Part shown: piece by piece, positions 22,154 through 61,855 of the stretch
Layout of the letters: the number at the start of each line of letters is the position of its first letter
How positions within the stretch are numbered: the stretch's first letter is position 1
Assembly (NCBI RefSeq): GCF_035594765.1
Contig: NC_085846.1
Span: forward strand, 955,513 to 1,019,512
Source of the DNA: Anolis carolinensis
Taxonomy: Eukaryota
Reading direction: 5' to 3'
DNA length: 64,000 nucleotides
Program-made: the position numbers and the translations under genes
The notes under the pieces: model-generated
Databases searched by the model: none
Seen by the model: only the letters and a program-made list of their open reading frames with translations
What the model was told of the DNA's origin: nothing

Positions 22154-25100
22154 ATGGTGAGTTTCCAGGGAGACGGAGGGAGGCGCGGGGGGGGGGGCGA
22201 GGGGGCGCTCGGTCCCTCATTCATCCGGTCTCATCCGGGTCTCTCCCGTCCCTCGTTCGCGTTGGCAGGCCTCTTCCGCGGCGTCGGCGGCGCTGACGCA
22301 AGGCCTGGAGCGCGTCCCGGACCAGACCGGGTACCTCGTCATCTGCGACGGAGCCGTGCTGGCGGTGAGGCGGGGGCGGGGCCTGGGAGACGGGGCGGGG
22401 CCTGGGAGAGGGAGTGACCGAGGATTCAGGGGTGGAGAGAAGGGGGCGGGGCCTGGGAGACGGGGGCGGGGCCTGGGAGAGGGAGTGACCGAGGATTCAG
22501 GGGTGGAGAGAAGGGGGCGGAGCCTGGGAGACGGGGGCGGGGCCTGGGAGAGGGAGTGACCGAGGATTCAGGAGTGGAGAGAAGGGGGCGGGGCCTGGGA
22601 GAGGGGGGCGGGGCCTGGGAGAGGGAGTGACCGAGGATTCAGGGGTGGAGAGAAGGGGGCGGGGCCTGGGAGACGGGGGCGGGGCCTGGGAGAGGGAGTG
22701 ACCGAGGATTCAGGGGTGGAGAGAAGGGGGCGGAGCCTGGGAGACGGGGGCGGGGCCTGGGAGAGGGAGTGACCGAGGATTCAGGGGTGGAGAGAAGGGG
22801 GCGGAGCCTGGGAGGGGGGCGGGGCCGGGGAAGGCTGGGAGTGAGGATTGAGAGGGGGCGGGGCCTGGGAGGGGGCGTGGTTGAGGACCGCTTTGAGTCC
22901 CCCTGGGTCAGTGTTTCTCACCCTGGGGGTTGGGACCCCGGGGGGGGGTCGCGAAGGGGGTTTCAGAGAGGTCGCTAAAGACCACCATATTTCTGATGGT
23001 CTTAGGAACCCAAATCCCTCCAGTATTTCCTGCCTGTCATGGGGATTCTTTGGGCCAAGTTTGGTTCAGCTCCATCGTTGGTGGGGTCCAAGGGGCTCTT
23101 TGATTGTAGGTGAACTATAAATCCCAGCAACTACCACTCCCAAATGTCAAGGACGATTTCCCCCAAACTCCACCAGTGCTCCCATTTGGGCATCTTGAGT
23201 ATTGGTGCCAAGTTTGGTCCAGATCCATCATTGTTTGAGTCACTTCACTTCACTTTATTTCTTAATTACTCGCTCTCCACCAGGGTGCTCTGAGCAACTT
23301 ACAATTTAAAATATCATTCCACAATATAAAAAAATACAACATAAAAACATTCAACAGTGACTGTTGTATGTCTTTCGAGCTGTGTGGCCATGTTCCAGAA
23401 GCATTCTCTCCTGACGTTTCGCCCACATCTATGGCAGGCATCCTCTGAGGATGCCTGCCATAGATGTGGGCGAAACGTCAGGAGAGAATGCTTCTGGAAC
23501 ATGGCCACACAGCCCGAAAGACATACAACAACCCTGTGATCCTGGCCATGAAAGCCTTTGACAATTCAACAGTGACTATTTGGCAAATTAGATCTGATTT
23601 ACTTCAATGGACAACCAAACAGCCAAGTCTTGAGTCCACGATGCTCTCTGGATGTAGGTGAACTACAACTCCCAAACTCAAGGTCAGTGCCCACCCACCA
23701 AACCCTTCCAGTGTTTCCTGTGGGTCATGGGAGTTCTGTGTGCCAAGTTTGGTTCAGTTCCAGAATGCTCTTTGATTGTAGGTGAACTCTAAATCCCAGC
23801 AACTACAACTCCAAAATGGCAAAACCAATCCCTTCCTGAACCCACCAGTATTCAAAGCTGGGCGTATTGGGTACTTGTGCCAAATGTGGTCCAGTGAATG
23901 AAAATACATCCTGCATATCAGATATTTACGTGACGATTCATAACAGTTGCTAAAGGACAGTGATGAAGTAGCAACAGAAATAATGTGATGGTTGGGGGGG
24001 GGGGGGTCACCACCACATGAGGAACTGGATTAAGGGGGTGGCGGCATTAGGAGGGTTGAGAACCACTGCCCCAGGTAAAGGTAAAGGTTTTCCCCTGACG
24101 TTAGGTCTTGTTGTGTCTGACTCTGGGGGTTGGGGCTCATCTCCATTCCTAAGCCGAAGAGCTGGCGTTGTCCGTAGACGTCTCCAAGGTCATGTGGCCA
24201 CAGGCATGGCTGCATGGAGCGCCCTAGGAGTGAGAAAAGCAGTCTACAAAATAAATCCTAATACTAGACACAGAGCTGCTTTGAGTCTCCAGGTGGAGAG
24301 AGAAGGTGGGGTATAGATAAACCTAATGCTAATACTAGGAGCCCCGGTGGCAAAGTGTGTTAAAGCGCTGAGCTGCTGAACTTGCAGACCAAAAGGTCCC
24401 AGGTTCAAATCCCGGGAGCGGAATGAGCGCCTGCTGTTAGCTCCAGCTCCTGCCAACCTAGCAGTTCGAAAACATGCCAATGTGAGTAGATCAATAGGTA
24501 CCACCCCGGTGGGAAGGTAACGGTGCTCCATGCAGACATGCCAGTGGCCACATGACCTTGGAGGGGTCTACAGACAACGCCGGCTCTTTGGCTTAGAAAT
24601 GGAGATGAGCACCAGAGTCCCAGAGTCAGACATGACTGGACTTAACGTCAGGGGAAACCTTGACCTTTACCTTAATGCTAGTACTAATTCCCCTCCTTGG
24701 CTGACCCCCTCCCTCCCCCTCCCCTTTGCAGTCAGCGGGTGACCTGGAGAATGACGAGCGCACGGCGGCGGCCCTCTCGGAGCTGGCCAGCACCGCCTGC
24801 GCCTTCCGCCTGCCGCGCTCCACGGACGTGCCCTTCCGGCGCATCTCAGGTGAGAGGAGGGGAAGGGGCCTTCTCTGGGGACACCCCCACCCCCCACTTT
24901 CGTGCTGGGGAAACGGGCAGGGGGCCAGGGTTGGGTTGTTGTGTCACATATCAAGTCAGTGCCCTTTGGCTTTACTCCTGCAGGATTCTGGGAAATGTAG
25001 TCAAAGGCAGGGCCTTTGGGATTCCCAGCCAAGCAGGTCCCGTCTCCCCTGAACTACATTTCCCAGAATTCTGCTGTGATGCAGGGCTTCATCCCACGTC

Positions 25101-33757: not shown

Positions 33758-36700
33758 TCAGCAGTTAGGATTGGTGAGAGTTGGAGTCCAAAACACCTGG
33801 AGGGAGGGCTGAAGTTGGCCCAGGCCTGTTCTAAAGAGATGCAGGGAGGCAGTGGATTGGCAGGGCCTCACCTGTAGTGCGTGTAGATGCTGGCGGTGAA
33901 GGGCAGCTTGGGGGTCGACCACTGGACCACCGCGATGAGAGGGACCTCCAGGCCCTGGGGGGGGGGGGAGAAGAGGCATCGACTTGGCCAGGACATTGGG
34001 GAGGGGGCACGGACTGCAGCCCCTTCCTCCCTCCCTGCCAAGAGCCAGGCTCCCCGCGCTCCCTCCTCACCTCCTTGGCGCTGCTGGGGGGCTGCTCGGG
34101 GGCCTGGAGCTGGAAGAGGAAGTTCTGCTCCTCAAGGGCCCGGAGGGAGCACGAGGCCGAGGAAGAGGAAGAGGAAGAGGAAGAGGAGGAGGAGACGCGG
34201 CAGAAGGAGGCCATGGAGACCTCGCCCGACTGGTGGCTGCAAGAGAAGGAGGAGAATGAAGAAGAGAAGAGGGATCAATAAAGAGAAGATAGAGAATAAG
34301 AAGAAGGAGGAAGAGAAAGAGAAGGAGGAAGAAAAGGAGAAGAAAGAGAAGGAGAATAAGAAGGAGAGGAAGAGAAAGAGAAGACGGAGAAAGAAGAGGA
34401 GAAGAAAGAGAAGGAGAATAAGAAGGAGAGGAAGAGAAAGAGAAGAGGGAGAAAGAAGAGGAGAAGAAAGAGAAGGAGAATAAGAAGGAGAGGAAGAGAA
34501 AGAGAAGAGGGAGAAAGAAGAGGAGAAGAAAGTGAAGGAGAAGCAAGAGAAGACGGAGAATAAGAAGAAGGAGAGGAAGGAGGAGGAGGAAGAGAAAGAG
34601 AAGAGGGATCAATAGAGGAAGAGAAGACAGAGAATAAGAAGGAGGAAGAGAAAGAGAAGGAGAAAGAAAAGAAGAAGAAAGAGAAGGAGAATAAGAAGGA
34701 GAGGAAGAGAAAGAGAAGAGGGAGAAAGAAGAGGAGAAGAAAGTGAAGGAGAAGCAAGAGAAGACGGAGAATAAGAAGAAGGAGGAAGAGAAAGAGAAGG
34801 AGGAAGAAAAGAAGAAGAAAGAGAAGGAGAATAAGAAGGAAAGGAAGAGAAAGAGAAGAGGGAGAAAGAAGAAGAGAAGAAAGAGAAGGAGAATAAGAAG
34901 GAAAGGAAGAGAAAGAGAAGAGGGAGAAAGAAGAGGAGAAGAAAGAGAAGGAGAATAAGAAGGAGAGGAAGAGAAAGAGAAGACGGAGAAAGAAGAGGAG
35001 AAGAAAGAGAAGGAGAATAAGAAGGAGAGGAAGAGAAAGAGAAGGGGGAGAAAGAAAAGGAGAAGAAAGTGAAGGAGAAGCAAGAGAAGACGGAGAATAA
35101 GAAGAAGGAGAGGAAGGAGGAGGAGGAAGAGAAAGAGAAGAGGGATCAATAGAGGAGGAAGAGAAGACAGAGAATAAGAAGGAGGAAGAGAAAGAGAAGG
35201 AGAAAGAAAAGGAGAAGAAAGAGAAGGAGAATAAGGAGAGGAAGAGAAAGAGAAGAGGGAGAAAGAAAAGAAGAAGAAAGAGAAGGAGAATAAGAAGGAG
35301 AGGAAGAGAAAGAGAAGAGGGAGAAAGAAGAGGAGAAGAAAGTGAAGGAGAAGCAAGAGAAGACGGAGAATAAGAAGAAGGAGGAAGAGAAAGAGAAGGA
35401 GGAAGAAAAGAAGAAGAAAGAGAAGGAGAATAAGAAGGAAAGGAAGAGAAAGAGAAGAGGGAGAAAGAAGAAGAGAAGAAAGAGAAGGAGAATAAGAAGG
35501 AAAGGAAGAGAAAGAGAAGAGGGAGAAAGAAGAGGAGAAGAAAGAGAAGGAGAATAAGAAGGAGAGGAAGAGAAAGAGAAGACGGAGAAAGAAGAGGAGA
35601 AGAAAGAGAAGGAGAATAAGAAGGAGAGGAAGAGAAAGAGAAGGGGGAGAAAGAAAAGGAGAAGAAAGTGAAGGAGAAGCAAGAGAAGACGGAGAATAAG
35701 AAGAAGGAGAGGAAGGAGGAGGAGGAAGAGAAAGAGAAGAGGGATCAATAGAGGAGGAAGAGAAGACAGAGAATAAGAAGGAGGAAGAGAAAGAGAAGGA
35801 GAAAGAAAAGGAGAAGAAAGAGAAGGAGAATAAGGAGAGGAAGAGAAAGAGAAGAGGGAGAAAGAAAAGAAGAAGAAAGAGAAGGAGAATAAGAAGGAGA
35901 GGAAGAGAAAGAGAAGAGGGAGAAAGAAGAGGAGAAGAAAGTGAAGGAGAAGCAAGAGAAGACGGAGAATAAGAAGAAGGAGGAAGAGAAAGAGAAGGAG
36001 GAAGAAAAGAAGAAGAAAGAGAAGGAGAATAAGAAGGAAAGGAAGAGAAAGAGAAGAGGGAGAAAGAAGAAGAGAAGAAAGAGAAGGAGAATAAGAAGGA
36101 AAGGAAGAGAAAGAGAAGAGGGAGAAAGAAGAGGAGAAGAAAGAGAAGGAGAATAAGAAGGAGAGGAAGAGAAAGAGAAGACGGAGAAAGAAGAGGAGAA
36201 GAAAGAGAAGGAGAATAAGAAGGAGAGGAAGAGAAAGAGAAGGGGGAGAAAGAAAAGGAGAAGAAAGTGAAGGAGAAGCAAGAGAAGACGGAGAATAAGA
36301 AGAAGGAGAGGAAGGAGGAGGAGGAAGAGAAAGAGAAGAGGGATCAATAGAGGAGGAAGAGAAGACAGAGAATAAGAAGGAGGAAGAGAAAGAGAAGGAG
36401 AAAGAAAAGGAGAAGAAAGAGAAGGAGAATAAGGAGAGGAAGAGAAAGAGAAGAGGGAGAAAGAAAAGAAGAAGAAAGAGAAGGAGAATAAGAAGGAGAG
36501 GAAGAGAAAGAGAAGACGGAGAAAGAAGAGGAGAAGAAAGAGGAGAAGAAAGAGATGACGGAGGAGAATAAGAAGAAGAGGAAGGAGGAGGAGAAAGAGG
36601 AGAAGGGGAAGAAGGGCTTAACGCCTGTCTGAGCCCCCCTGCCCAGGCCTCTCAGGAGGGGCCCTTGGTGGAAGGGGAAGGGGGAAGGGACATGAGCCCC

Positions 36701-39700
36701 CCATAATTCCCCCCCCAATATTCCCCATATCCCCCCCCCCCCCCCGTTTCCTTACCAAACGTCATCAACCAGCAGGACGGACCCGTCGGGCATCATGGGG
36801 AGGTAACTGGCATTGAAGTTGGGCAGGATGCGGACGTCCCAGACGGAGACCTCCTCCTGCGAGGCCGCGTTCAGGACTGGGGAGGGGTCACACAAGGCGG
36901 GGGGAGGTCACAGGTCATAGGGGGGCTGTGTGTGATTCCCAGGAGGGAGGGGCCGGAAGATGGTTTTCCCTCTCCCCCAATTGGGTTGTTGTATGTTTTC
37001 CGGATTGTATGGCCATGTTCTAGAAGCATTCTCTCCTGACGTTTCACCCACATCTATGGCAGGCATCCTCAGAGGTTGTGAGGTATGGAGAAACTAAGCA
37101 AGGAAGGTTTATATATATGTTGTCGAAGGCTTTCATGGCCGGGATCACAGGGTTGTTGTACGTCTTTCGGGCTGTGTGAATACTTCTGGAACATGGCCAC
37201 ACAGCCCCAAAGACATATAACAACCCGGTTTATATATATCTGTGGAAACTCCTGACGTTTTGCCCACATCTATGGCAGGCATCCTCAGAGGTTGTGAGGC
37301 ATGGAGAAACTAAGCAAGGAAGGTTTATACACAGTAGAGTCTCACTTATCCAACATAAACGGGCTGGCAGAATGTTGGATAAGCAAATATGTTGGATAAT
37401 AAGGAGAGATTAAGAAAAAGCCTATTAAACATCAAAATGGGTTATGATTTTACAAATTAAGCACCAAAACATCATGTTATACAACAAATTTGACAGAAAG
37501 AGTAGTTCAATACGCAGTAAAGCTATGTAGTAATTACTGTATTTACGAATTTAGCACCAAAATATCACGATTTATTGAAAACATTGACTACAAAAATGCG
37601 TTGGATAATCCAGAACGTTGGATAAGTGAGACTCTACTGTATATATCTGTGGAAAGTCCAGGGTGAGAGAACTCTTTGTCAGTTGGAGGCCAGTGTGAAT
37701 GTTGTAGTTAATCACCTTAATTAGCACTGAATAGCTTCATCTCCTGGCTTCCTGCCTGGAGGCATCCTTTGTTCAGAGTCATTAGCTGCCCTTGGTCCCC
37801 ATGTCTGGTTATCAGAGTGTTGCTTCTTATTGACTGTTTTGATTTTTGAGTTTTTTAATACTCACCTTTCAGGACCGTCAGGTGCTTCCCGGCCACGTTG
37901 AGCTGCTGGCACTTGACCTCTGGGGGCGGCAGGACGGTCAGCAGGGTGCTCACTGAGGGAGGGGGTGGGGGGGGGAGGGACACATTAAGATTAGTGACCA
38001 CACAGAAGACAGCGAGTTGCAAGCTTTTAGTTTAAGAAAAACAAGAACACAGAGACATTCATTCCCTATAATCTGCTACCAATGACAGTTTCCTCAGGAT
38101 ACAGTGAGTGTCGGGACCCCTTCTGGGACCCCCACCTTTGCCCCCCCCTCCCCCCCGCCAATGCCGACCTTGTGCCTTGAAGGCGCCCTGCTCCTCCTTG
38201 AAGGTCTGGGCGGGGGCCCGGTCCTGCAGGAGGCTCAGGTAGCCCCTCTCCCGCGCCTCCGCCTTCTCCTGGTCCCGCTTCCAGACGGTCACCACGATCT
38301 GTGGGAAGGAGAGACACAGGTGTGAGATTTTGGTTGTGTGAGTATGAAATGCGAATCAAGTGGTTATTGCTGTTTTGCAAGTGTGTGTTTCAGCAATGAA
38401 ACAGTTAACAGCAGGCCAGTTTGACTGACCGCCTGCTGTGGCCTATGCGACATGATTTCCGGCCTTGGAGGACAGGACTTCCTTCCTTCGGACTAAGGAA
38501 TGTGCTTCTTACCAGTTGGACCAGGGGTCCCCAAATTTTTTAAGCAGGGGGCCGGTCCACAATCCTTCAGACTGTGGAGGGGCCGAACTATCATTTGAAA
38601 AAGAAACACAAACAAATCCCTATGCACACTGCACATGTCTTATTTGTAGTGCAAAACAACAACAACAATGAAAGAACAATAAAATATTTTAAAATGAAAA
38701 CAATTTTAACCAACATAAACCTATCAGGCCAATGAGATAGTCAAGTTAATTAGGATTGTTGTTGTTGTTGTTGTTGTTGTGTGCCTTCAAGTCAAGTGGG
38801 CGAGCCTAATTCTAAAATTATTTATTTATTCATTTACTACATTTATTTACTACATTTATATCCCACCCTTCTCACCCCGAAGGGAACTCAGAGCAGCTGT
38901 ATGTACATAGAATATATTATATTATTAGCACAGCACAATATTAGCATTCTATATTACTATATTGAACTATACCACTATACTGTAATATTATATGTAATAT
39001 ATAACAAATAATTAATATTATTATATGGTATTATTATTAGTATTACATTGTACAACATGACAATATTATCAATATATGTATATATAATATATTATATTAT
39101 TAAAACTGATTGATGGTTTTGAAGAAACCCACACCCCTACACACACCCTGGTGACAAGAGGGAGGGGTCATCACAGGGTGGGGTGAGTGACAGATAAACA
39201 TGATCCTAGGTTTGAATGGAATTGTATGAAAGGAGTATGAATATGATGTGTATGTTTATATTGTAAGCTGCCCTGAGTCCCCTGATGGGTGAGAAGGGCG
39301 GGGTAGAAGTGATGCAATAAATAAACAAATAACTGGGCCCAAGATGCAATCCTGACACATCGAGGCCCAGAAAATAATAATAAATAATAAACTTTATTTT
39401 TATATCCCGCCCCATCTCCCCGGAGGGACTCGGGGCGGCTCACAACAGGGACAAGCCCGAAACAACAACACAACATATTTGACATAAACTTAAAACATTC
39501 CAAAGATACACAAAATAAAATAATAAACCATACATTAAAATCCGAGCAGATAAAAACAGAGTAATTAAAAGCAAACCAGCAGGGACAGGTTTCATAAAGT
39601 GCTGTGTCATGGAAATAAGTAACAGTGATAAAGTGCCATACGCTTTTAAAACAGAAAGAAGTATTCGGATGACAGCTCTATTGGGCCCATTGAGGCCCAG

Positions 39701-45914: not shown

Positions 45915-46155
45915 GTCTAGACTATCCCTGGGGAATGAGGTCCCGGGTGGGGGGAAGAACCCGGTCTGTGTGAAGCGAGTGTGAGTGTTGCCACTGGCAG
46001 GCCTGAATAGCATTGGGTGGTGTGTTGTCGAAGGCTTTCATGGCCGGGATCACAGGGTTGTTGTATGTTTTCTGGGCTGTATGCCCATGTTCCAGAAGTA
46101 TTCTCTCCTGACGTTTCGCCCACATCTATGGCAGGCATCCTCAGATACCTCACAA

Positions 46156-46196
46156 CCTCTGAGGATGCCTGCCATAGATGTGGGCGAAACGTCAGG
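46156..46196 (+). ncRNA. Minimal hammerhead ribozyme (Penelope), with an inverted partner at ~46107-46146
   Basis: CCT-CTGAGGA-TGCCTGC catagat GTGGGC-GAAACGTC-AGG; the mirror copy on the minus strand also keeps CTGAGGA and GAAACGTC. Confidence 0.7.
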
Positions 46197-48366
46197 AGAG
46201 AATACTTCTAGAACATGGCCATACAGCCCGGAAAACATACAACAACCCAGCATTGGGTGGCCCTGCAGCTGCAAAGTCCATCAGGGAGGACTAACCAAGC
46301 TTGCCAATGGCAACATTCACACTTGCTTCCTGGACATCATTCCACAGGGATATATACACACACACTCCACTTGCCTCATTGCCAATGGAACCTTTGAAGA
46401 TGCTCAGACACAGATAATAATAATAATAATATATGGTAATAATATTACAATATAATTAACTATAATATATCAGTAATATATAATTTAACATATATTGCAT
46501 AATAATAAAGTAATACAATATAATAAATCAAGGTAATAATAAAATAATAATAATGGTAACAATCATAATTATAATATAACAATAAAGTGCCAGTTAACAC
46601 CACCCAGGCAAAGGATGACTCCAAGCAATAAGAGCCAGGCCACCCCACTGAATGACTTTGCAACTTCATGGATTCTCAGTTGCTAACCAAGCTTGCTCAT
46701 TGCCACATTCACACTCGCTTCAAACTCACAAGGGTTCTTTCTCCCTCCTTCCCTCCCTGGGCATTATTCCACAGGGATATATAGGCTATGCACCCCAGTT
46801 GCCTCATTTCCAACAGAACCTCTGAAGATGTTCAGACGCAGAAATAATAATAATAACAATATTATAATATAATTAAATATAATATATCAATATATAACAG
46901 AATAGAATAAATTATAGCAATAATAAAAGAATAATAGTAATAACCATCATTATAATATAATGGCATCCTGATAGGATCTGATGTGAGTGGGATAGTGTGC
47001 AGGGTGGGAGGAAGAACCCTCGTCTGTCTGAAGTGAGTGCAAATGCTGCAATTAGCCAGACTGAATGGCATTGAGTAGCCCCGAAGGGAGGGAGGGAGGG
47101 AGGACGGAAGGGAGGCAGACATGCATAGAGCGCGAGGAACCCTTGGGAGGCAGCGCCCCTTGTGGCCGGACGGAGGAATGACTGGCTGGCGCAAAAGCAA
47201 GGCCTCCCTTATGATGATCTCTTTATTACAAAATTATTGCTTTTTCAAAATAGTTAAGAATAAAACCCCCTCCGTGTACAACAGAGCAAGCTTCATGATT
47301 GCTGCAAAGGGGGGGGGACCTCAATGAGAATCCTGGTCGTACCAATAGGAAGGGGCGGGGGGGGGGGTGTTGAAGGGACACCCCCCCCCCCAGTGAAAAC
47401 CCCCAAAAGCAGCTCTTTGGAAAGAAAGCAGGTTATAGAATTATAAACTGAAAGGGACCCCCAGGGGCCATCCAATCGGACCTTCTTTCTTTCTTCCTTT
47501 CTTCCTGCCAGGTAGGAAGATGCAGTGGAATCTCTCCCGACAGATGTCCATCCAGCCTCTGCTTCATATATTGGCTTTAGAGCTTCCTGTTGTTCTTAAA
47601 AGCAGCATGGCATTGCATTGCAGTGCCTGCAATGCCTGCACTCTTGGCTCTATTTCGGGGAAAGGCCCGTGGGACCCCCGCCTTCCCCAGCTCCATCCCA
47701 GTCCCGCTGGGGTGTTGTTGTGTGGTTTCCGGGCTCCGTGGCCAATGTGCTCTGGCAGCATTTGCTCCTTTTTGTGTTTCGCCTGCACCTGTGGCTACGG
47801 GCACCTTCAGAGGATCTGATGGGAGTCAAGCCAGTGGAAGAGAGAGACCTGTGGAATGATGTCCAGGGTGGGCAGACAAGCGCCAATTATGGTGCAATTA
47901 GCAAGCTAGACCTTTATCTGCTGAGTGGGATCCACCCATTAGCATGTGAGCAGCCATGAAGACTGCAGAGTCAATTAGTGAGGGCGTCTGCACAGAGATT
48001 CTGGACCACTCGGACAACCACTTTGTCAAACTACACAGAGAAGCCATTGGAACCCACAAGAAGCCGGTGGACAACGTCAACAGAAACCAAGAAAACGAAC
48101 ACAGTCTGGCTCCCAGTATCCAGAATGCCTGTGGCGGAGTCTCCCTTGTGCTGGAGAGCCCAGTGGAGGGGATCACTTTGCCTTTGGACCACGGCCAGAC
48201 AGACCGGGAAATTCACAGCCATCCAAAGACTCCAGCCATGAAGCCTTCAACAACACTCAGGAGACAATGCTGCCGAACACCTTGGCCATTCAGCGAGGAA
48301 ACCGCACACCGACACCCCGGTGCTTCGGCCACGATAGTCTTCATTGGGGTGCGAAAGGCAGGGTCA

Positions 48367-57573: not shown

Positions 57574-58727
57574 CCTAGAGTTGGAAGAGACCCCCAAAGG
57601 CTATCCAGTCCAACCCCATCTGCCATAAGGCACAATCCAAACCTTCCTGACAGGTGGCCATCCACTCCATCCTCTGTTTAAAAGGCAAAAAACTTGGAAC
57701 CTCTCCTGTTCTCCAAGAATTCTCAGAGATGATTGCCAGTGGTTCTGAAATGACTTCTGCTGGTTCCTTCAATACTCTCGGGTGTAGTTCACCTGACCCT
57801 GGAGACTTGAATCCATTTAGAGCAGCCAGGTCTTCCTGGGCGGCTCCTGTACCTATTTTGGGCTGCATTTCCCCTCTAGCCTCGTCTGCTCCGTATTGTT
57901 CATCTTGAACCTTGATCTCCCTTTGGGAGAAAGAAGACTGAGGCTCAAGAAGGGGTTGAGCAGCTGGGCCTTTTCCCTGTCTGTGCCCTGCCAGCATCCC
58001 ACCATCCTCTCCATGCAGAGGTTATACCAGGCATGGGCAAACTGGTGTTCCTTCCAGGTGTTTTGGACTTCAACTCCCACCATTCCTGGCCTCGGGCCCC
58101 TTCCTTTTCCCCCTCAGCCGCTTAAGCGGAAAAGGAAAGGGAAAAGGAAAGGGAAAAGGAAAGGGCCCGAGGCCAAGAATGGTGGGAGTTGAAGTCCAAA
58201 ACACCTGGAGGGATGGTCAAAGTTTGCTCGTACCTGTGTTATATCATTTCTTTATTCTTCCTACTTCTATTGACATAACCAAAGAACACCTTTTTTATTG
58301 CTTTTAATTTCTCTGGCAAGCTTGAGCTCATTTTATGTCTTTGCCTTTCTGACGTATTTCCTATACACGTTGGTTATTTGTTCAAATTCCTCTTCCATTT
58401 CCTCTCTGAGGTCTCTTCCAACTCTATGAGTCTATGATTCTATACATCTGAGCTCAGCTAAAAGTTCTTTGGGCGTCTGTCCTGGGTTTTTTTTAGATCC
58501 CACCCAGTTCTTCACGGAGGAGACCTCCCACAACTCCTTGTTCCTTTGATTCTTGTTCCCAAGTGCTCTCGGCCTGGTTTCTGGGACTGAAATCCTGCAT
58601 CTCTTCACAGGTGGAAACATCCTTGACGTGGGGTTGCTGTGTGGTTTCCAAGATGCATGGCTATGTTTCTGCAGCATTCTCTCCTGACATTTTGCCCGCA
58701 TCTGCGGCTAATGGCATCTTCAGAGGT

Positions 58728-58859
58728 NNNNNNNNNNNNNNNNNNNNNNNNNNNNNNNNNNNNNNNNNNNNNNNNNNNNNNNNNNNNNNNNNNNNNNNNN
58801 NNNNNNNNNNNNNNNNNNNNNNNNNNNNNNNNNNNNNNNNNNNNNNNNNNNNNNNNNNN
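58728..58859. other. Assembly gap (N run)
   Basis: Run of N. Confidence 1.
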
Positions 58860-60639: not shown

Positions 60640-61855
60640 GGGAGGGGGCTTCCCCGACCCCCTCCCCCTCCCCCTCCCCCTCCCCTTCCTGCGCCTCGGA
60701 GGGATTAAGAGGCCGGCAGATGGAGGGAGGGGGGAGGGGTCGCCTTAGGGTCAGGGAGGAGATCCTCCAGAGGGGCGCCGCTCCCCCTCCTCGCCCCCCT
60801 CCGCCGGCCTCTCCCTCCCCCCTCCCTCCCCCGTCCTCCGCCGGCCAGCTGTCTGTCCTGGCCCGGGCTGACCGCCCTCCGCCCTCCTCCTTGTTTCTTT
60901 CTTTCTTTCTTTCCTTCCCGGAGGGAGAAGGGAGCGGCCGGAGAGATAGCGGAGGGAAGGCAGGGGCCAAGGCCAAGCGCTGCTCCGGGGCATGTGCAGA
61001 GCGCCCCCCCCCGTCTCTCCTCCTTACCTGGATCACTCCTCGCGCTCTTCTCCCCTTTCTTCTCTTCTCTTTCTTCTCTTGTTTCTTCTCCCCTTTCTTC
61101 TCCTCTTTTTGGTCCACAACTTTCCTGCTTCTGCTCCTCCTCCTCCTCCTCCTCCTCCTCTCTAGTATCTCTCTGTTGTGTCTCTGTCTCTCTCTCTNNN
61201 NNNNNNNNNNNNNNNNNNNNNNNNNNNNNNNNNNNNNNNNNNNNNNNNNNNNNNNNNNNNNNNNNNNNNNNNNNNNNNNNNNNNNNNNNNNNNNNNNNNN
61301 NNNNNNNNNNNNNNNNNNNNNNNNNNNNNNNNNNNNNNNNNNNNNNNNNNNNNCCTGCCGGCCCCCTCCCTCCCCCTCCCCCCCTCCCCCCCCCCCGATG
61401 CGGAGGGAAGAGAGGAAGGAGGGGAAGAGGGGAGGGGCCAGGCGGGGAAAGAGAGAGAGAGAAAGAGAGAGAGGGAGGGGAGGGGGAGGAGACCCCGGCC
61501 CCCGCAGGCCCCGCCCCTCCCCGCAGGCCCCGCCCCCTCACCCCGCGCTCTCGCAGCTGGACGGCGCTCTCCTCTTCCTCTTCCTCCTCCTCCTCCCTCT
61601 TCATCTTCTTTAGAGAAACCGAGGGGAGAGGAGCGAGGGAGGAGGAAGAAGGGAAGGAGGAAGGAGAAAGGAAAGAGAGGAAGAGGAGGAGGAAGAAGGA
61701 AAGGGAAAGGAGGAGGAAGGAGATGTGAAGGAAGGGAAAAGGAAGAGGAGGAGGAAGAAGGACAACAACCCGCCGGGGCTGCCAGGACCCACGGGAGACC
61801 GCGCTCGAGGGGCACACGAGGGTCAGAGATGGGAAGACGTCGTTCACTGACCGAG

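What the first reader, a model, noticed from the sequence alone, without database searches (positions are those of the whole stretch)
37035..37291. Tandem pair of minimal hammerhead ribozymes in sense orientation inside TRAPPC14 intron 4
Seen: two direct-repeat copies on the transcribed (minus) strand, 216 nt apart. Copy 37035-37075 has an intact core, CUGAGGA...GAAA-C-GUC, with stems I and II. Copy 37251-37291 has GAAA changed to AAAA. Stem III is only the palindrome ACGU. Established: Penelope-like elements carry such minimal type I hammerheads, proposed to cleave as dimers through the palindromic stem III. Inference: the pre-mRNA of this housekeeping gene could fold a dimer with one live site and cleave ~160 nt upstream of the exon 5 acceptor, or the mutation may have been selected to defuse it.
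Basis: partly seen in the sequence, partly recalled or inferred. Interest (0 to 1): 0.8.

Follow-up and report, generated by a model that had tools for sequence, protein, structure and literature searches.

The report
Decayed Penelope-element hammerheads in TRAPPC14 intron
The two hammerhead-ribozyme motifs are real, but they are the standard ribozyme motif of two truncated copies of a very abundant lizard retrotransposon (Poseidon_Ac, a Penelope-like element) that fill this intron, both are damaged by ordinary CpG decay, and nothing indicates that they cut the TRAPPC14 transcript.

Summary
Two direct repeats, 81 nt long and 96% identical, lie 216 nt apart on the minus strand. That strand carries TRAPPC14 exons (Pfam TRAPP14_N).

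The motif is not a chance look-alike. It matches, base for base, the pLTR/ORF junction of the published Poseidon_Ac (PAc) consensus from Anolis. The hammerhead at that junction has been tested: it cleaves in vitro only when PAc protein is added, and no RNA-seq ends were found at the site in vivo (PMC11167929).

About 89% of the 989-nt intron is transposon. It holds a 5'-truncated PAc copy split by a MITE, then a second truncated copy that carries a nested mini-PAc insertion with a 13-nt target-site duplication.

Both core changes hit one CpG, C11.1-G12. It reads CA in copy A, which removes G12, and TG in copy B, which leaves a G.U pair. This is neutral decay and needs no selection.

In a double hammerhead each core cuts the other copy's site. 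Only copy A's site, about 378 nt upstream of the acceptor, could still be cut, and only by copy B's weakened core.

Predicted folds put the active form 14-36 kcal/mol above the minimum. Earlier follow-ups in this scan reached the same verdict for the HOXB6 and HOXB8 introns. Interest is low.

The parts
37866..37952 (-). TRAPPC14 exon upstream of the intron
   Evidence: Pfam TRAPP14_N profile 217-245, E 8.9e-11. The splice sites were read.
36877..37865 (-). Intron of 989 nt (GT..AG). About 89% of it (36983-37861) is transposon-derived.
   Evidence: the flanking exons are consecutive in the Pfam profile.
37646..37861 (-). PAc copy 1, 5'-truncated: end of the ORF (consensus about nt 2401-2541) plus the first part of the pLTR. 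It starts 4 nt after the 5' splice site.
   Evidence: The translation [14 protein letters not shown]... matches the C-terminus of Poseidon_Ac_1p. The DNA was read against the consensus.
37330..37645 (.). MITE inserted at a TA in the pLTR of copy 1. TIR CAGTAGAGTCTCACTTATCCAAC; inverted arms of 29 nt, 97% complementary.
   Evidence: (I3). Contigs of other genomic PLE copies join 37326-37330 directly to 37640-37643.
37283..37329 (-). 3' end of the pLTR of copy 1, up to ...CCTCACAACCTCTGAGG
37251..37291 (-). Hammerhead motif A: C3 = 37288, C11.1 = 37262, A instead of G12 at 37261, C17 = 37254. PAc ORF nt 1-34 = 37282-37249, then an abrupt junction to pLTR sequence.
37227..37248 (-). Start of PAc copy 2, 5'-truncated inside the pLTR (TTTCCACAGATATATATAAACC). 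Its last 13 nt are the left copy of the target-site duplication.
37119..37226 (-). Nested head-to-head mini-PAc insertion without a hammerhead. Antisense arm = ORF nt about 84-36 (37226-37178); sense arm = nt 57-116 (37177-37119). It forms a long hairpin.
   Evidence: Inverted repeat I2; generic miRNA-hairpin hits on both strands. The 13-nt duplication ATATATATAAACC is at 37239-37227 and 37118-37106. The arms end at the published RT start sites.
37067..37118 (-). Right copy of the target-site duplication plus the rest of the pLTR of copy 2
37035..37075 (-). Hammerhead motif B: C3 = 37072, U instead of C11.1 at 37046, G12 = 37045, C17 = 37038
36983..37066 (-). PAc ORF nt 1-84 of copy 2. It ends at ...ACAACAACCC, the first published RT initiation site, so there is no 'tail'.
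   Evidence: The translation [15 protein letters not shown]... matches the Poseidon_Ac_1p N-terminus. The tail is described as spanning nt 85-119.
36877..36982 (-). Native 3' part of the intron: C-rich tract and the AG acceptor
   Evidence: This is the only low-depth (single-copy) part of the stretch.
36756..36876 (-). TRAPPC14 exon downstream. The start is firm; the 3' end was not checked.
   Evidence: Pfam TRAPP14_N profile 247-285, E 1.2e-20

Best explanation
The two motifs are the minimal hammerheads that sit at the pLTR/ORF junction of the Penelope-like retrotransposon Poseidon_Ac (PAc). Two dead, 5'-truncated PAc copies lie head-to-tail in the TRAPPC14 intron, in the sense orientation.

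How the pair arose: this element reverse-transcribes from internal start sites about 85 and 111-118 nt into its ORF. It also prefers AT-rich targets, including the TATATA tract of its own pLTR, so partial tandems are normal for it. Copy 1 runs from the ORF 3' end through the pLTR and hammerhead A to ORF nt 34. Copy 2 runs from the last 62 nt of the pLTR through hammerhead B to ORF nt 84.

The 216-nt spacing comes from a later event. A 108-nt head-to-head mini-PAc inserted into copy 2's pLTR with a 13-nt target-site duplication. A MITE also landed in copy 1's pLTR.

Since insertion the copies have decayed neutrally. The CpG formed by C11.1 and G12 became CA in copy A, which loses G12, a base I know as the general base of catalysis. 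It became TG in copy B, which leaves a G.U closing pair on helix II.

Shown here: the identity with PAc, the anatomy, the target-site duplication, the CpG changes and the gene context. Inferred: that the pair is catalytically inert or nearly so in the pre-mRNA, and that it has no role for TRAPPC14.
For: - The published Poseidon_Ac consensus ends ...CCTCACAACCTCTGAGG and restarts ATGCCTGCCATAGATGTGGGCGAAACGTCAGGAG.... The window motif is identical. Three copies match all 40 nt, and copies A and B differ by 1 nt each.
- The paper places C3 and G8 before the ATG and the cut 26 nt after the start codon. That is exactly the geometry here.
- Translations match both termini of the PAc protein.
- Copy ends fall at nt 84 and nt 116, the published RT start sites.
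- Target-site duplications flank the nested element (13 nt) and the sister mini-elements at 46021-46249 (11 nt) and 23363-23563 (14 nt).
- The family is present at about 9 loci in this 64-kb window. Between 31,000 and 65,000 contig pieces per run lie on the stretch.
- CpG decay: the same CpG is CA in A, TG in B and CA in 15816+, and the second CpG is also lost in 15816+.
- The PAc hammerhead does not cleave without PAc protein, and no RNA-seq reads start or end at the site. S. mansoni min-HHR dimers cleave poorly.
- The double-hammerhead fold lies 26.5-35.6 kcal/mol above the minimum free energy, and the half-dimers 14-26 kcal/mol above it. Pair probabilities for helices I and III are at most 0.005.
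Against: - No cleavage assay or end-mapping exists for this locus. All runs on offer are contigs, which cannot show RNA ends.
- The tandem arrangement that the dimer model requires is present here.
- Copy B's core keeps all 11 invariant core bases, and G.U at 10.1-11.1 may still allow some activity.
- PAc is expressed in anole tissues, so the assisting protein could be available.
- Nearest-neighbour energies ignore tertiary contacts and co-transcriptional folding.
- How ORF nt 34 of copy 1 came to be joined to the pLTR of copy 2 (37249/37248) is unresolved. It could be a template switch or a deletion.
Confidence: 0.9

Rival explanations
1. The tandem pair folds into an intramolecular double hammerhead in TRAPPC14 pre-mRNA. 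Copy B's core then cuts after C17 of copy A (37254), possibly helped by PAc protein, and lowers or modulates TRAPPC14 output.
For: The copies are in tandem and in the sense orientation. The ACGU palindrome is intact in both, and copy B keeps every invariant core base. Tandem layout is the stated requirement for dimeric cleavage. The PAc hammerhead does cleave when PAc protein is added.
Against: One of the two active sites is dead (G12 to A). The other has G.U instead of the highly conserved G10.1-C11.1 pair. Min-HHR dimers cleave poorly even in vitro. No in vivo ends were found for the whole family. The half-dimer lies 14-26 kcal/mol above the minimum, and copy B's flank is locked in a 49-nt inverted repeat, 82% complementary. 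Even if the intron were cut, the effect on the mRNA would depend on how fast cleavage is relative to splicing, which is unknown.
Confidence: 0.05
2. The G12-to-A change in copy A was fixed by selection, to stop a harmful ribozyme in a housekeeping gene.
For: The change hits a catalytically essential base, and the insertion lies in a broadly needed gene.
Against: G12 is the G of a CpG. Copy B lost the same CpG on the other strand, and the unrelated copy 15816+ shows the identical CA change. Perfect copies sit elsewhere in the window on both strands without apparent cost. The ancestral ribozyme is barely active on its own.
Confidence: 0.03
3. The 216-nt unit between the two hammerheads is a retrozyme-like element that is excised and circularised.
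For: The spacing falls in the 170-400 nt range of animal non-LTR retrozymes, which are thought to derive from PLE pLTRs. The unit contains a long hairpin.
Against: The unit is not a repeated monomer. It is the sum of a truncated pLTR and a nested insertion with its own target-site duplication. Excision needs two live sites and at most one exists.
Confidence: 0.01
4. The motif is a chance look-alike and not a hammerhead at all.
For: Rfam hammerhead models give no hit at the gathering threshold or at E up to 10.
Against: Rfam also misses the perfect-consensus copies, so the negative result says nothing about these copies. The exact sequence was shown to cleave, with C3G and G8C knockouts and a compensatory rescue. 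It has every hallmark of the min-HHR class.
Confidence: 0.01

Closest known systems
PAc (Poseidon_Ac) hammerhead at the pLTR/ORF junction, Anolis carolinensis (PMC11167929)
   Same: The 40-nt motif and its flanks are the same sequence. The ATG is at A9 and the cut is after ORF nt 29. The copies end at the published RT start sites and sit in AT-rich targets.
   Different: These are dead, 5'-truncated copies without an RT/EN ORF. Copy A has A at position 12 and copy B has U at 11.1. They lie inside a host intron.
Minimal hammerheads (min-HHR) of metazoan Penelope-like elements (Cervera & de la Pena 2014, PMC4209133)
   Same: No helix III loop, a palindromic 15.1-16.1 stretch, an unpaired base between 9 and 10.1, a long helix II (6 bp), a short helix I, and a location in the pLTR.
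   Different: Helix I has 3 bp here, against the 4-5 bp described for the S. mansoni families.
Double hammerheads of ASBVd and newt satellite 2 (Forster et al. 1988; cited, not read here)
   Same: Two adjacent motifs with an unstable helix III can merge their helices III. Each site is then built from both copies.
   Different: Here one core is dead and the other weakened, and the merged helix III would have only 4 bp.
Animal non-LTR retrozymes (PMC7229834; bioRxiv 10.64898/2026.07.22.740005)
   Same: Type I hammerheads a few hundred nt apart, related to PLE pLTRs.
   Different: This is not a homogeneous tandem monomer, two live sites are lacking, and there is no evidence of circular RNA.
Conserved intronic hammerheads of amniotes (HH9/HH10; De la Pena & Garcia-Robles 2010, cited)
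   Same: A hammerhead in the sense orientation inside an intron.
   Different: Those are canonical, efficient, single-copy and deeply conserved. This one is a young, high-copy transposon relic that the Rfam models do not detect.

Membership tests
PLE minimal hammerhead (min-HHR) | Core box C3-U4-G5-A6-N7-G8-A9 | tested here: met
   CUGAGGA is present in both copies.
PLE minimal hammerhead (min-HHR) | Core box G12-A13-A14 followed by A15.1 | tested here: inconclusive
   Met in copy B (GAAA). Not met in copy A (AAAA, A at 37261).
PLE minimal hammerhead (min-HHR) | Unpaired nucleotide between A9 and G10.1 | tested here: met
   There is a U at 37065 and at 37281. The feature is listed.
PLE minimal hammerhead (min-HHR) | Conserved G10.1-C11.1 pair closing a long helix II | tested here: inconclusive
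   Helix II has 6 bp in both copies. The closing pair is G-C in copy A and G.U in copy B (U at 37046).
PLE minimal hammerhead (min-HHR) | No helix III loop; palindromic 15.1-16.1; H17 | tested here: met
   A-C-G-U followed by C17 in both copies.
PLE minimal hammerhead (min-HHR) | Short helix I able to close the junction | tested here: met
   CCU/AGG, 3 bp. This is the same helix I that the paper draws for PAc nt -9 to +44.
PLE minimal hammerhead (min-HHR) | Self-cleavage | not testable with these tools
   Published only for the family consensus, and only with PAc protein. The runs on offer are contigs.
Poseidon_Ac (PAc) Penelope-like element | Sequence match to the consensus pLTR, ORF start and ORF end | tested here: met
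Poseidon_Ac (PAc) Penelope-like element | 3' ends at the internal RT start sites (about nt 85 and nt 111-118), with or without the 34-nt tail | tested here: met
   Copy 2 ends at nt 84 and the nested element at nt 116.
Poseidon_Ac (PAc) Penelope-like element | Intact RT plus GIY-YIG ORF (autonomous copy) | tested here: not met
   Only consensus nt about 2401-2667 and nt 1-84 are present. These are dead fragments.
Animal non-LTR retrozyme | Tandem array of homogeneous monomers of 170-400 nt, each with a working hammerhead | tested here: not met
   The 216-nt spacing is a truncated pLTR plus a nested insertion with its own target-site duplication. One core is dead.
Rfam hammerhead families (types I, II, III, HH9, HH10) | Score at or near the family's gathering threshold | tested here: not met
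   No hammerhead hit, even for the perfect copies. The models do not cover this minimal variant.

The most novel reading that the evidence does not exclude
In tissues that express PAc protein, the sense tandem pair forms an intramolecular double hammerhead. Copy B's weakened core then cuts the TRAPPC14 pre-mRNA after 37254. A retrotransposon's protein-assisted ribozyme would thus tune a host housekeeping transcript.
Probability: 0.04. Interest if true: 0.55.

Novelty: already known. Interest (0 to 1): 0.1.

Why it matters
It matters little for TRAPPC14. The result is mainly useful as calibration for the scan.

- In this lizard genome the PAc hammerhead motif is everywhere. There are 8 recognisable copies in this 64-kb window, and each palindromic mini-element puts one on each strand. 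A sense hammerhead inside an intron is therefore the expected background.
- Tandem pairs arise automatically, because the element targets its own pLTR.
- The motif carries two CpGs in its catalytic 3' half, C11.1-G12 and C15.2-G16.2. In a CpG-depleting vertebrate genome the ribozyme is therefore among the first things to decay.
- For any future tandem pair of this kind, a core mutation in one copy disables the cleavage site of the other copy.

Tried and rejected
- Rfam at the gathering threshold over the whole window, and at E up to 10 over 1 kb. Neither gave a hammerhead hit. The same was true over the perfect copies at 46100-46260, so the negative result is uninformative.
- The miRNA-family hits lie far below their gathering scores and occur on both strands. 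I read them as generic matches to the long palindromes and rejected them.
- RNA evidence. The one run search returned only runs kept as contigs, and none is on record as RNA. Laying four of them showed only that 36983-37861 is very high-copy repeat. No starts or ends can be read, and the many 'joints' come from other genomic copies.
- Lunse et al. 2017 is not held in the library. A viroid review gave no description of which copy cuts which site. That point rests on strand connectivity, on the fact that only the swapped pairing gave a nested three-way junction, and on my recollection of Forster et al. 1988.
- I looked for a target-site duplication around the whole composite insertion (flanks at 37862-37865 and 36982 downward) and saw none.
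- I did not count upstream exons, so the intron number is unverified.
The N runs at 58728-58859 and 61198-61353 were left alone.
Full report
**1. What is in the sequence**

On the minus strand, 37329-37249 and 37113-37033 are a direct repeat of 81 nt, 96% identical, with a start-to-start distance of 216. Each copy contains CCU-CUGAGGA-U-GCCUGC-CAUAGAU-GUGGG(C/U)-(G/A)AAA-CGUC-AGG.

In hammerhead numbering, copy B has C3 at 37072, G12 at 37045 and C17 at 37038. Copy A has C3 at 37288, position 12 at 37261 and C17 at 37254. Helix II has 6 bp (G-C, C-G, C-G, U.G, G.U, C-G) with a 7-nt loop. An unpaired U sits between A9 and G10.1, helix I is CCU/AGG, and there is no helix III loop, only A-C-G-U.

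Three qualifications apply:
- Copy B has U at 11.1, which gives a G.U closing pair.
- Helix I has only 3 bp.

**2. Is it more than chance?**

The 26-nt core word has 8 matches in the window with up to 3 mismatches, and none in 100 shuffles. A relaxed min-HHR descriptor that I wrote finds three complete motifs, at 23445+, 46159+ and copy B, and none in 100 shuffles.

Rfam gives no hammerhead hit at all. It also misses the perfect copies, so that negative result says only that the curated models do not cover this minimal variant.

**3. What it is**

Other copies in the window sit in palindromic elements of about 230 bp. A paper on the Penelope-like element PAc (Poseidon of Anolis carolinensis) gives the Repbase consensus in its supplement (PMC11167929). 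The consensus ends ...TTTCCACAGATATATATTAACC...CCTCACAACCTCTGAGG. In the tandem arrangement it continues ATGCCTGCCATAGATGTGGGCGAAACGTCAGGAGAGAATG...ACATACAACAACCC...

The window motif is this junction, base for base. The paper states that C3 and G8 lie before the start codon and that the cut is 26 nt after it, which is exactly the geometry here. Translations of 37066-36980 ([15 protein letters not shown]...) and of 37861-37730 ([14 protein letters not shown]...) match the two ends of the PAc protein.

The motif also has every hallmark that Cervera and de la Pena list for PLE minimal hammerheads:
- a base between positions 9 and 10.1
- the G10.1-C11.1 pair
- a long helix II and a short helix I
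- palindromic 15.2-16.2
- a location in the pLTR

**4. Gene context**

Minus-strand exons give Pfam TRAPP14_N in collinear order.

| Exon (window coordinates) | TRAPP14_N profile positions |
|---|---|
| 38170-38295 | 175-216 |
| 37866-37952 | 217-245 |
| 36756-36876 | 247-285 |
| 33871-33966 | 335-363 |

The intron is 37865..36877, 989 nt, GT..AG. The gene and the sense orientation are confirmed. I did not check the number 'intron 4'.

**5. Anatomy of the intron (minus strand, 5' to 3')**

| Window coordinates | Content |
|---|---|
| 37865-37862 | Native intron, 4 nt |
| 37861-37646 | PAc consensus about nt 2401-2622: end of the ORF, the stop codon, and the first part of the pLTR |
| 37645-37330 | MITE with 23-29-nt TIRs, inserted at a TA of the pLTR's TATATA tract |
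| 37329-37283 | Rest of the pLTR |
| 37282-37249 | ORF nt 1-34, carrying hammerhead A |
| 37248-37227 | Abrupt junction to pLTR sequence (TTTCCACAGATATATATAAACC), the start of copy 2 |
| 37226-37119 | 108-nt head-to-head mini-PAc: antisense ORF nt about 84-36 joined to sense nt 57-116 |
| 37239-37227 and 37118-37106 | 13-nt target-site duplication ATATATATAAACC flanking the mini-PAc |
| 37105-37067 | Rest of the pLTR of copy 2 |
| 37066-36983 | ORF nt 1-84, carrying hammerhead B |
| 36982-36877 | Native intron, 106 nt, with the acceptor |

The copy ends at nt 84 and nt 116 coincide with the two internal reverse-transcription start sites that the paper maps. The tail spans nt 85-119, with starts in an AC-rich stem-loop at 111-118. 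Sister mini-elements in the window have target-site duplications of 11 and 14 nt.

The paper also shows that PAc nicks AT-rich DNA, including its own pLTR, which explains why partial tandems and nested copies are common. About 89% of the intron (36983-37861) is transposon. Without the nested element and its duplication the two hammerheads would be 95 nt apart.

How ORF nt 34 of copy 1 became joined to the pLTR of copy 2 is not resolved. It could be an RT template switch or a deletion. The junction lies 5 nt past the ribozyme cut site, not at it.

**6. The two core changes**

The consensus reads GGG-CG-AAA-CG-UC, so C11.1-G12 is a CpG and C15.2-G16.2 is another. Copy A has CA at the first CpG and copy B has TG at the same CpG. 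These are the two products of methyl-CpG deamination on the two strands.

An unrelated copy at 15816+ has CA at both CpGs. Three of the eight copies in the window have lost the first CpG. Nothing here calls for selection.

**7. Would the pair work?**

Both published views hold that such minimal motifs cannot cleave as monomers and need a second copy to build helix III. Strand connectivity fixes how that works.
- In the 4-bp ACGU/ACGU helix, A15.1 of one copy pairs with U16.1 of the other.
- G12-A13-A14 and helix II of one copy therefore face C17 and the 3' strand of helix I of the other.
- Only this swapped pairing gives a nested three-way junction. It is the pairing ViennaRNA accepted. Keeping helix I within one copy would cross helix III.

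From memory, this is also what the mutational test in Forster et al. 1988 showed; I could not read that paper here.

The only site left is C17 of copy A (37254), 378 nt upstream of the acceptor. It would be served by copy B's core, which has G.U in place of the highly conserved G10.1-C11.1 pair.

Predicted energies also argue against it.
- In RNAs of 283 to 989 nt, the double hammerhead lies 26.5-35.6 kcal/mol above the minimum free energy.
- The half with B as enzyme and A as substrate lies 14-26 kcal/mol above it.
- Pair probabilities for helices I and III are at most 0.005.
- Part of the reason is that the tail of copy B pairs with the antisense arm of the nested element over 49 nt at 82% complementarity.

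These energies ignore tertiary contacts and folding during transcription, so they are indicative only.

Experimentally, the consensus PAc hammerhead showed no cleavage without PAc protein. C3G and G8C abolished the protein-assisted cleavage and the double mutant partly restored it. No RNA-seq reads began or ended at the site in vivo. S. mansoni min-HHR dimers and trimers cleaved weakly.

**8. Reads**

The single run search returned only runs stored as contigs, and none is on record as RNA. Laying four of them put 31,590 to 65,305 contig pieces on the 991 nt. Only 36876-36977 behaved as single-copy sequence.

This confirms that the PAc pieces and the MITE are very abundant repeats.

**9. Verdict**

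This is a known ribozyme motif in dead copies of a known, very abundant retrotransposon. The tandem layout is explained by the element's own insertion habits, and the core changes by CpG decay.

Two earlier follow-ups in this scan reached the same verdict for single copies in the HOXB8 and HOXB6 introns of the same genome. Several first-reader notes describe the palindromic mini-elements.

The one feature that sets this locus apart is the sense tandem, which formally meets the dimer requirement. One active site is dead and the other weakened, so I give a real effect on TRAPPC14 RNA about 5%.

Noticed in passing
window 34241-36615: A 2.4-kb purine-rich (GAA/GAG-type) complex tandem array lies between TRAPPC14 exons, apparently in an intron downstream of the one studied. 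TRF reports periods of 15, 62, 264 and 335. ORF-like repeats recur every 599 nt (34743, 35342, 35941).
   Followed up: partly
window 37330-37645: A 316-bp MITE with TIR CAGTAGAGTCTCACTTATCCAAC (29-nt arms, 97% complementary) is inserted at a TA inside the PAc pLTR. The contig pile-up shows that it too is very high-copy in this genome.
   Followed up: partly
window 46021-46249, 23363-23563 and 15724-15939: These are palindromic head-to-head mini-PAc elements, each with a hammerhead motif on both strands. The first two are flanked by target-site duplications of 11 nt (GCATTGGGTGG) and 14 nt (ATTCAACAGTGACT). The copies at 46144- and 46159+ match the published 40-nt consensus motif perfectly.
   Followed up: partly
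window 37858-37866: The truncated PAc copy starts only 4 nt after the exon/intron junction. Positions +5 and +6 of the GTGAGT donor site may therefore be supplied by transposon sequence.
   Followed up: no
window 37249/37248: PAc ORF nt 34 is joined directly to pLTR sequence. This junction is specific to the locus, lies 5 nt downstream of the hammerhead cut site, and has no clear origin (RT template switch or internal deletion).
   Followed up: no
window 37151-37225 and 46100-46218: Rfam miRNA models (mir-4672, MIR8565, mir-4433 and others) match on both strands, far below their gathering scores. They look like generic responses to the PAc palindromes and not like miRNA genes.
   Followed up: partly
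window 6711-6815, 21671-21753, 47714-47819, 58631-58727: Further PAc tail fragments, older and more diverged (70-81% identity). The last one abuts an N run (58728-58859), which was left untouched.
   Followed up: no
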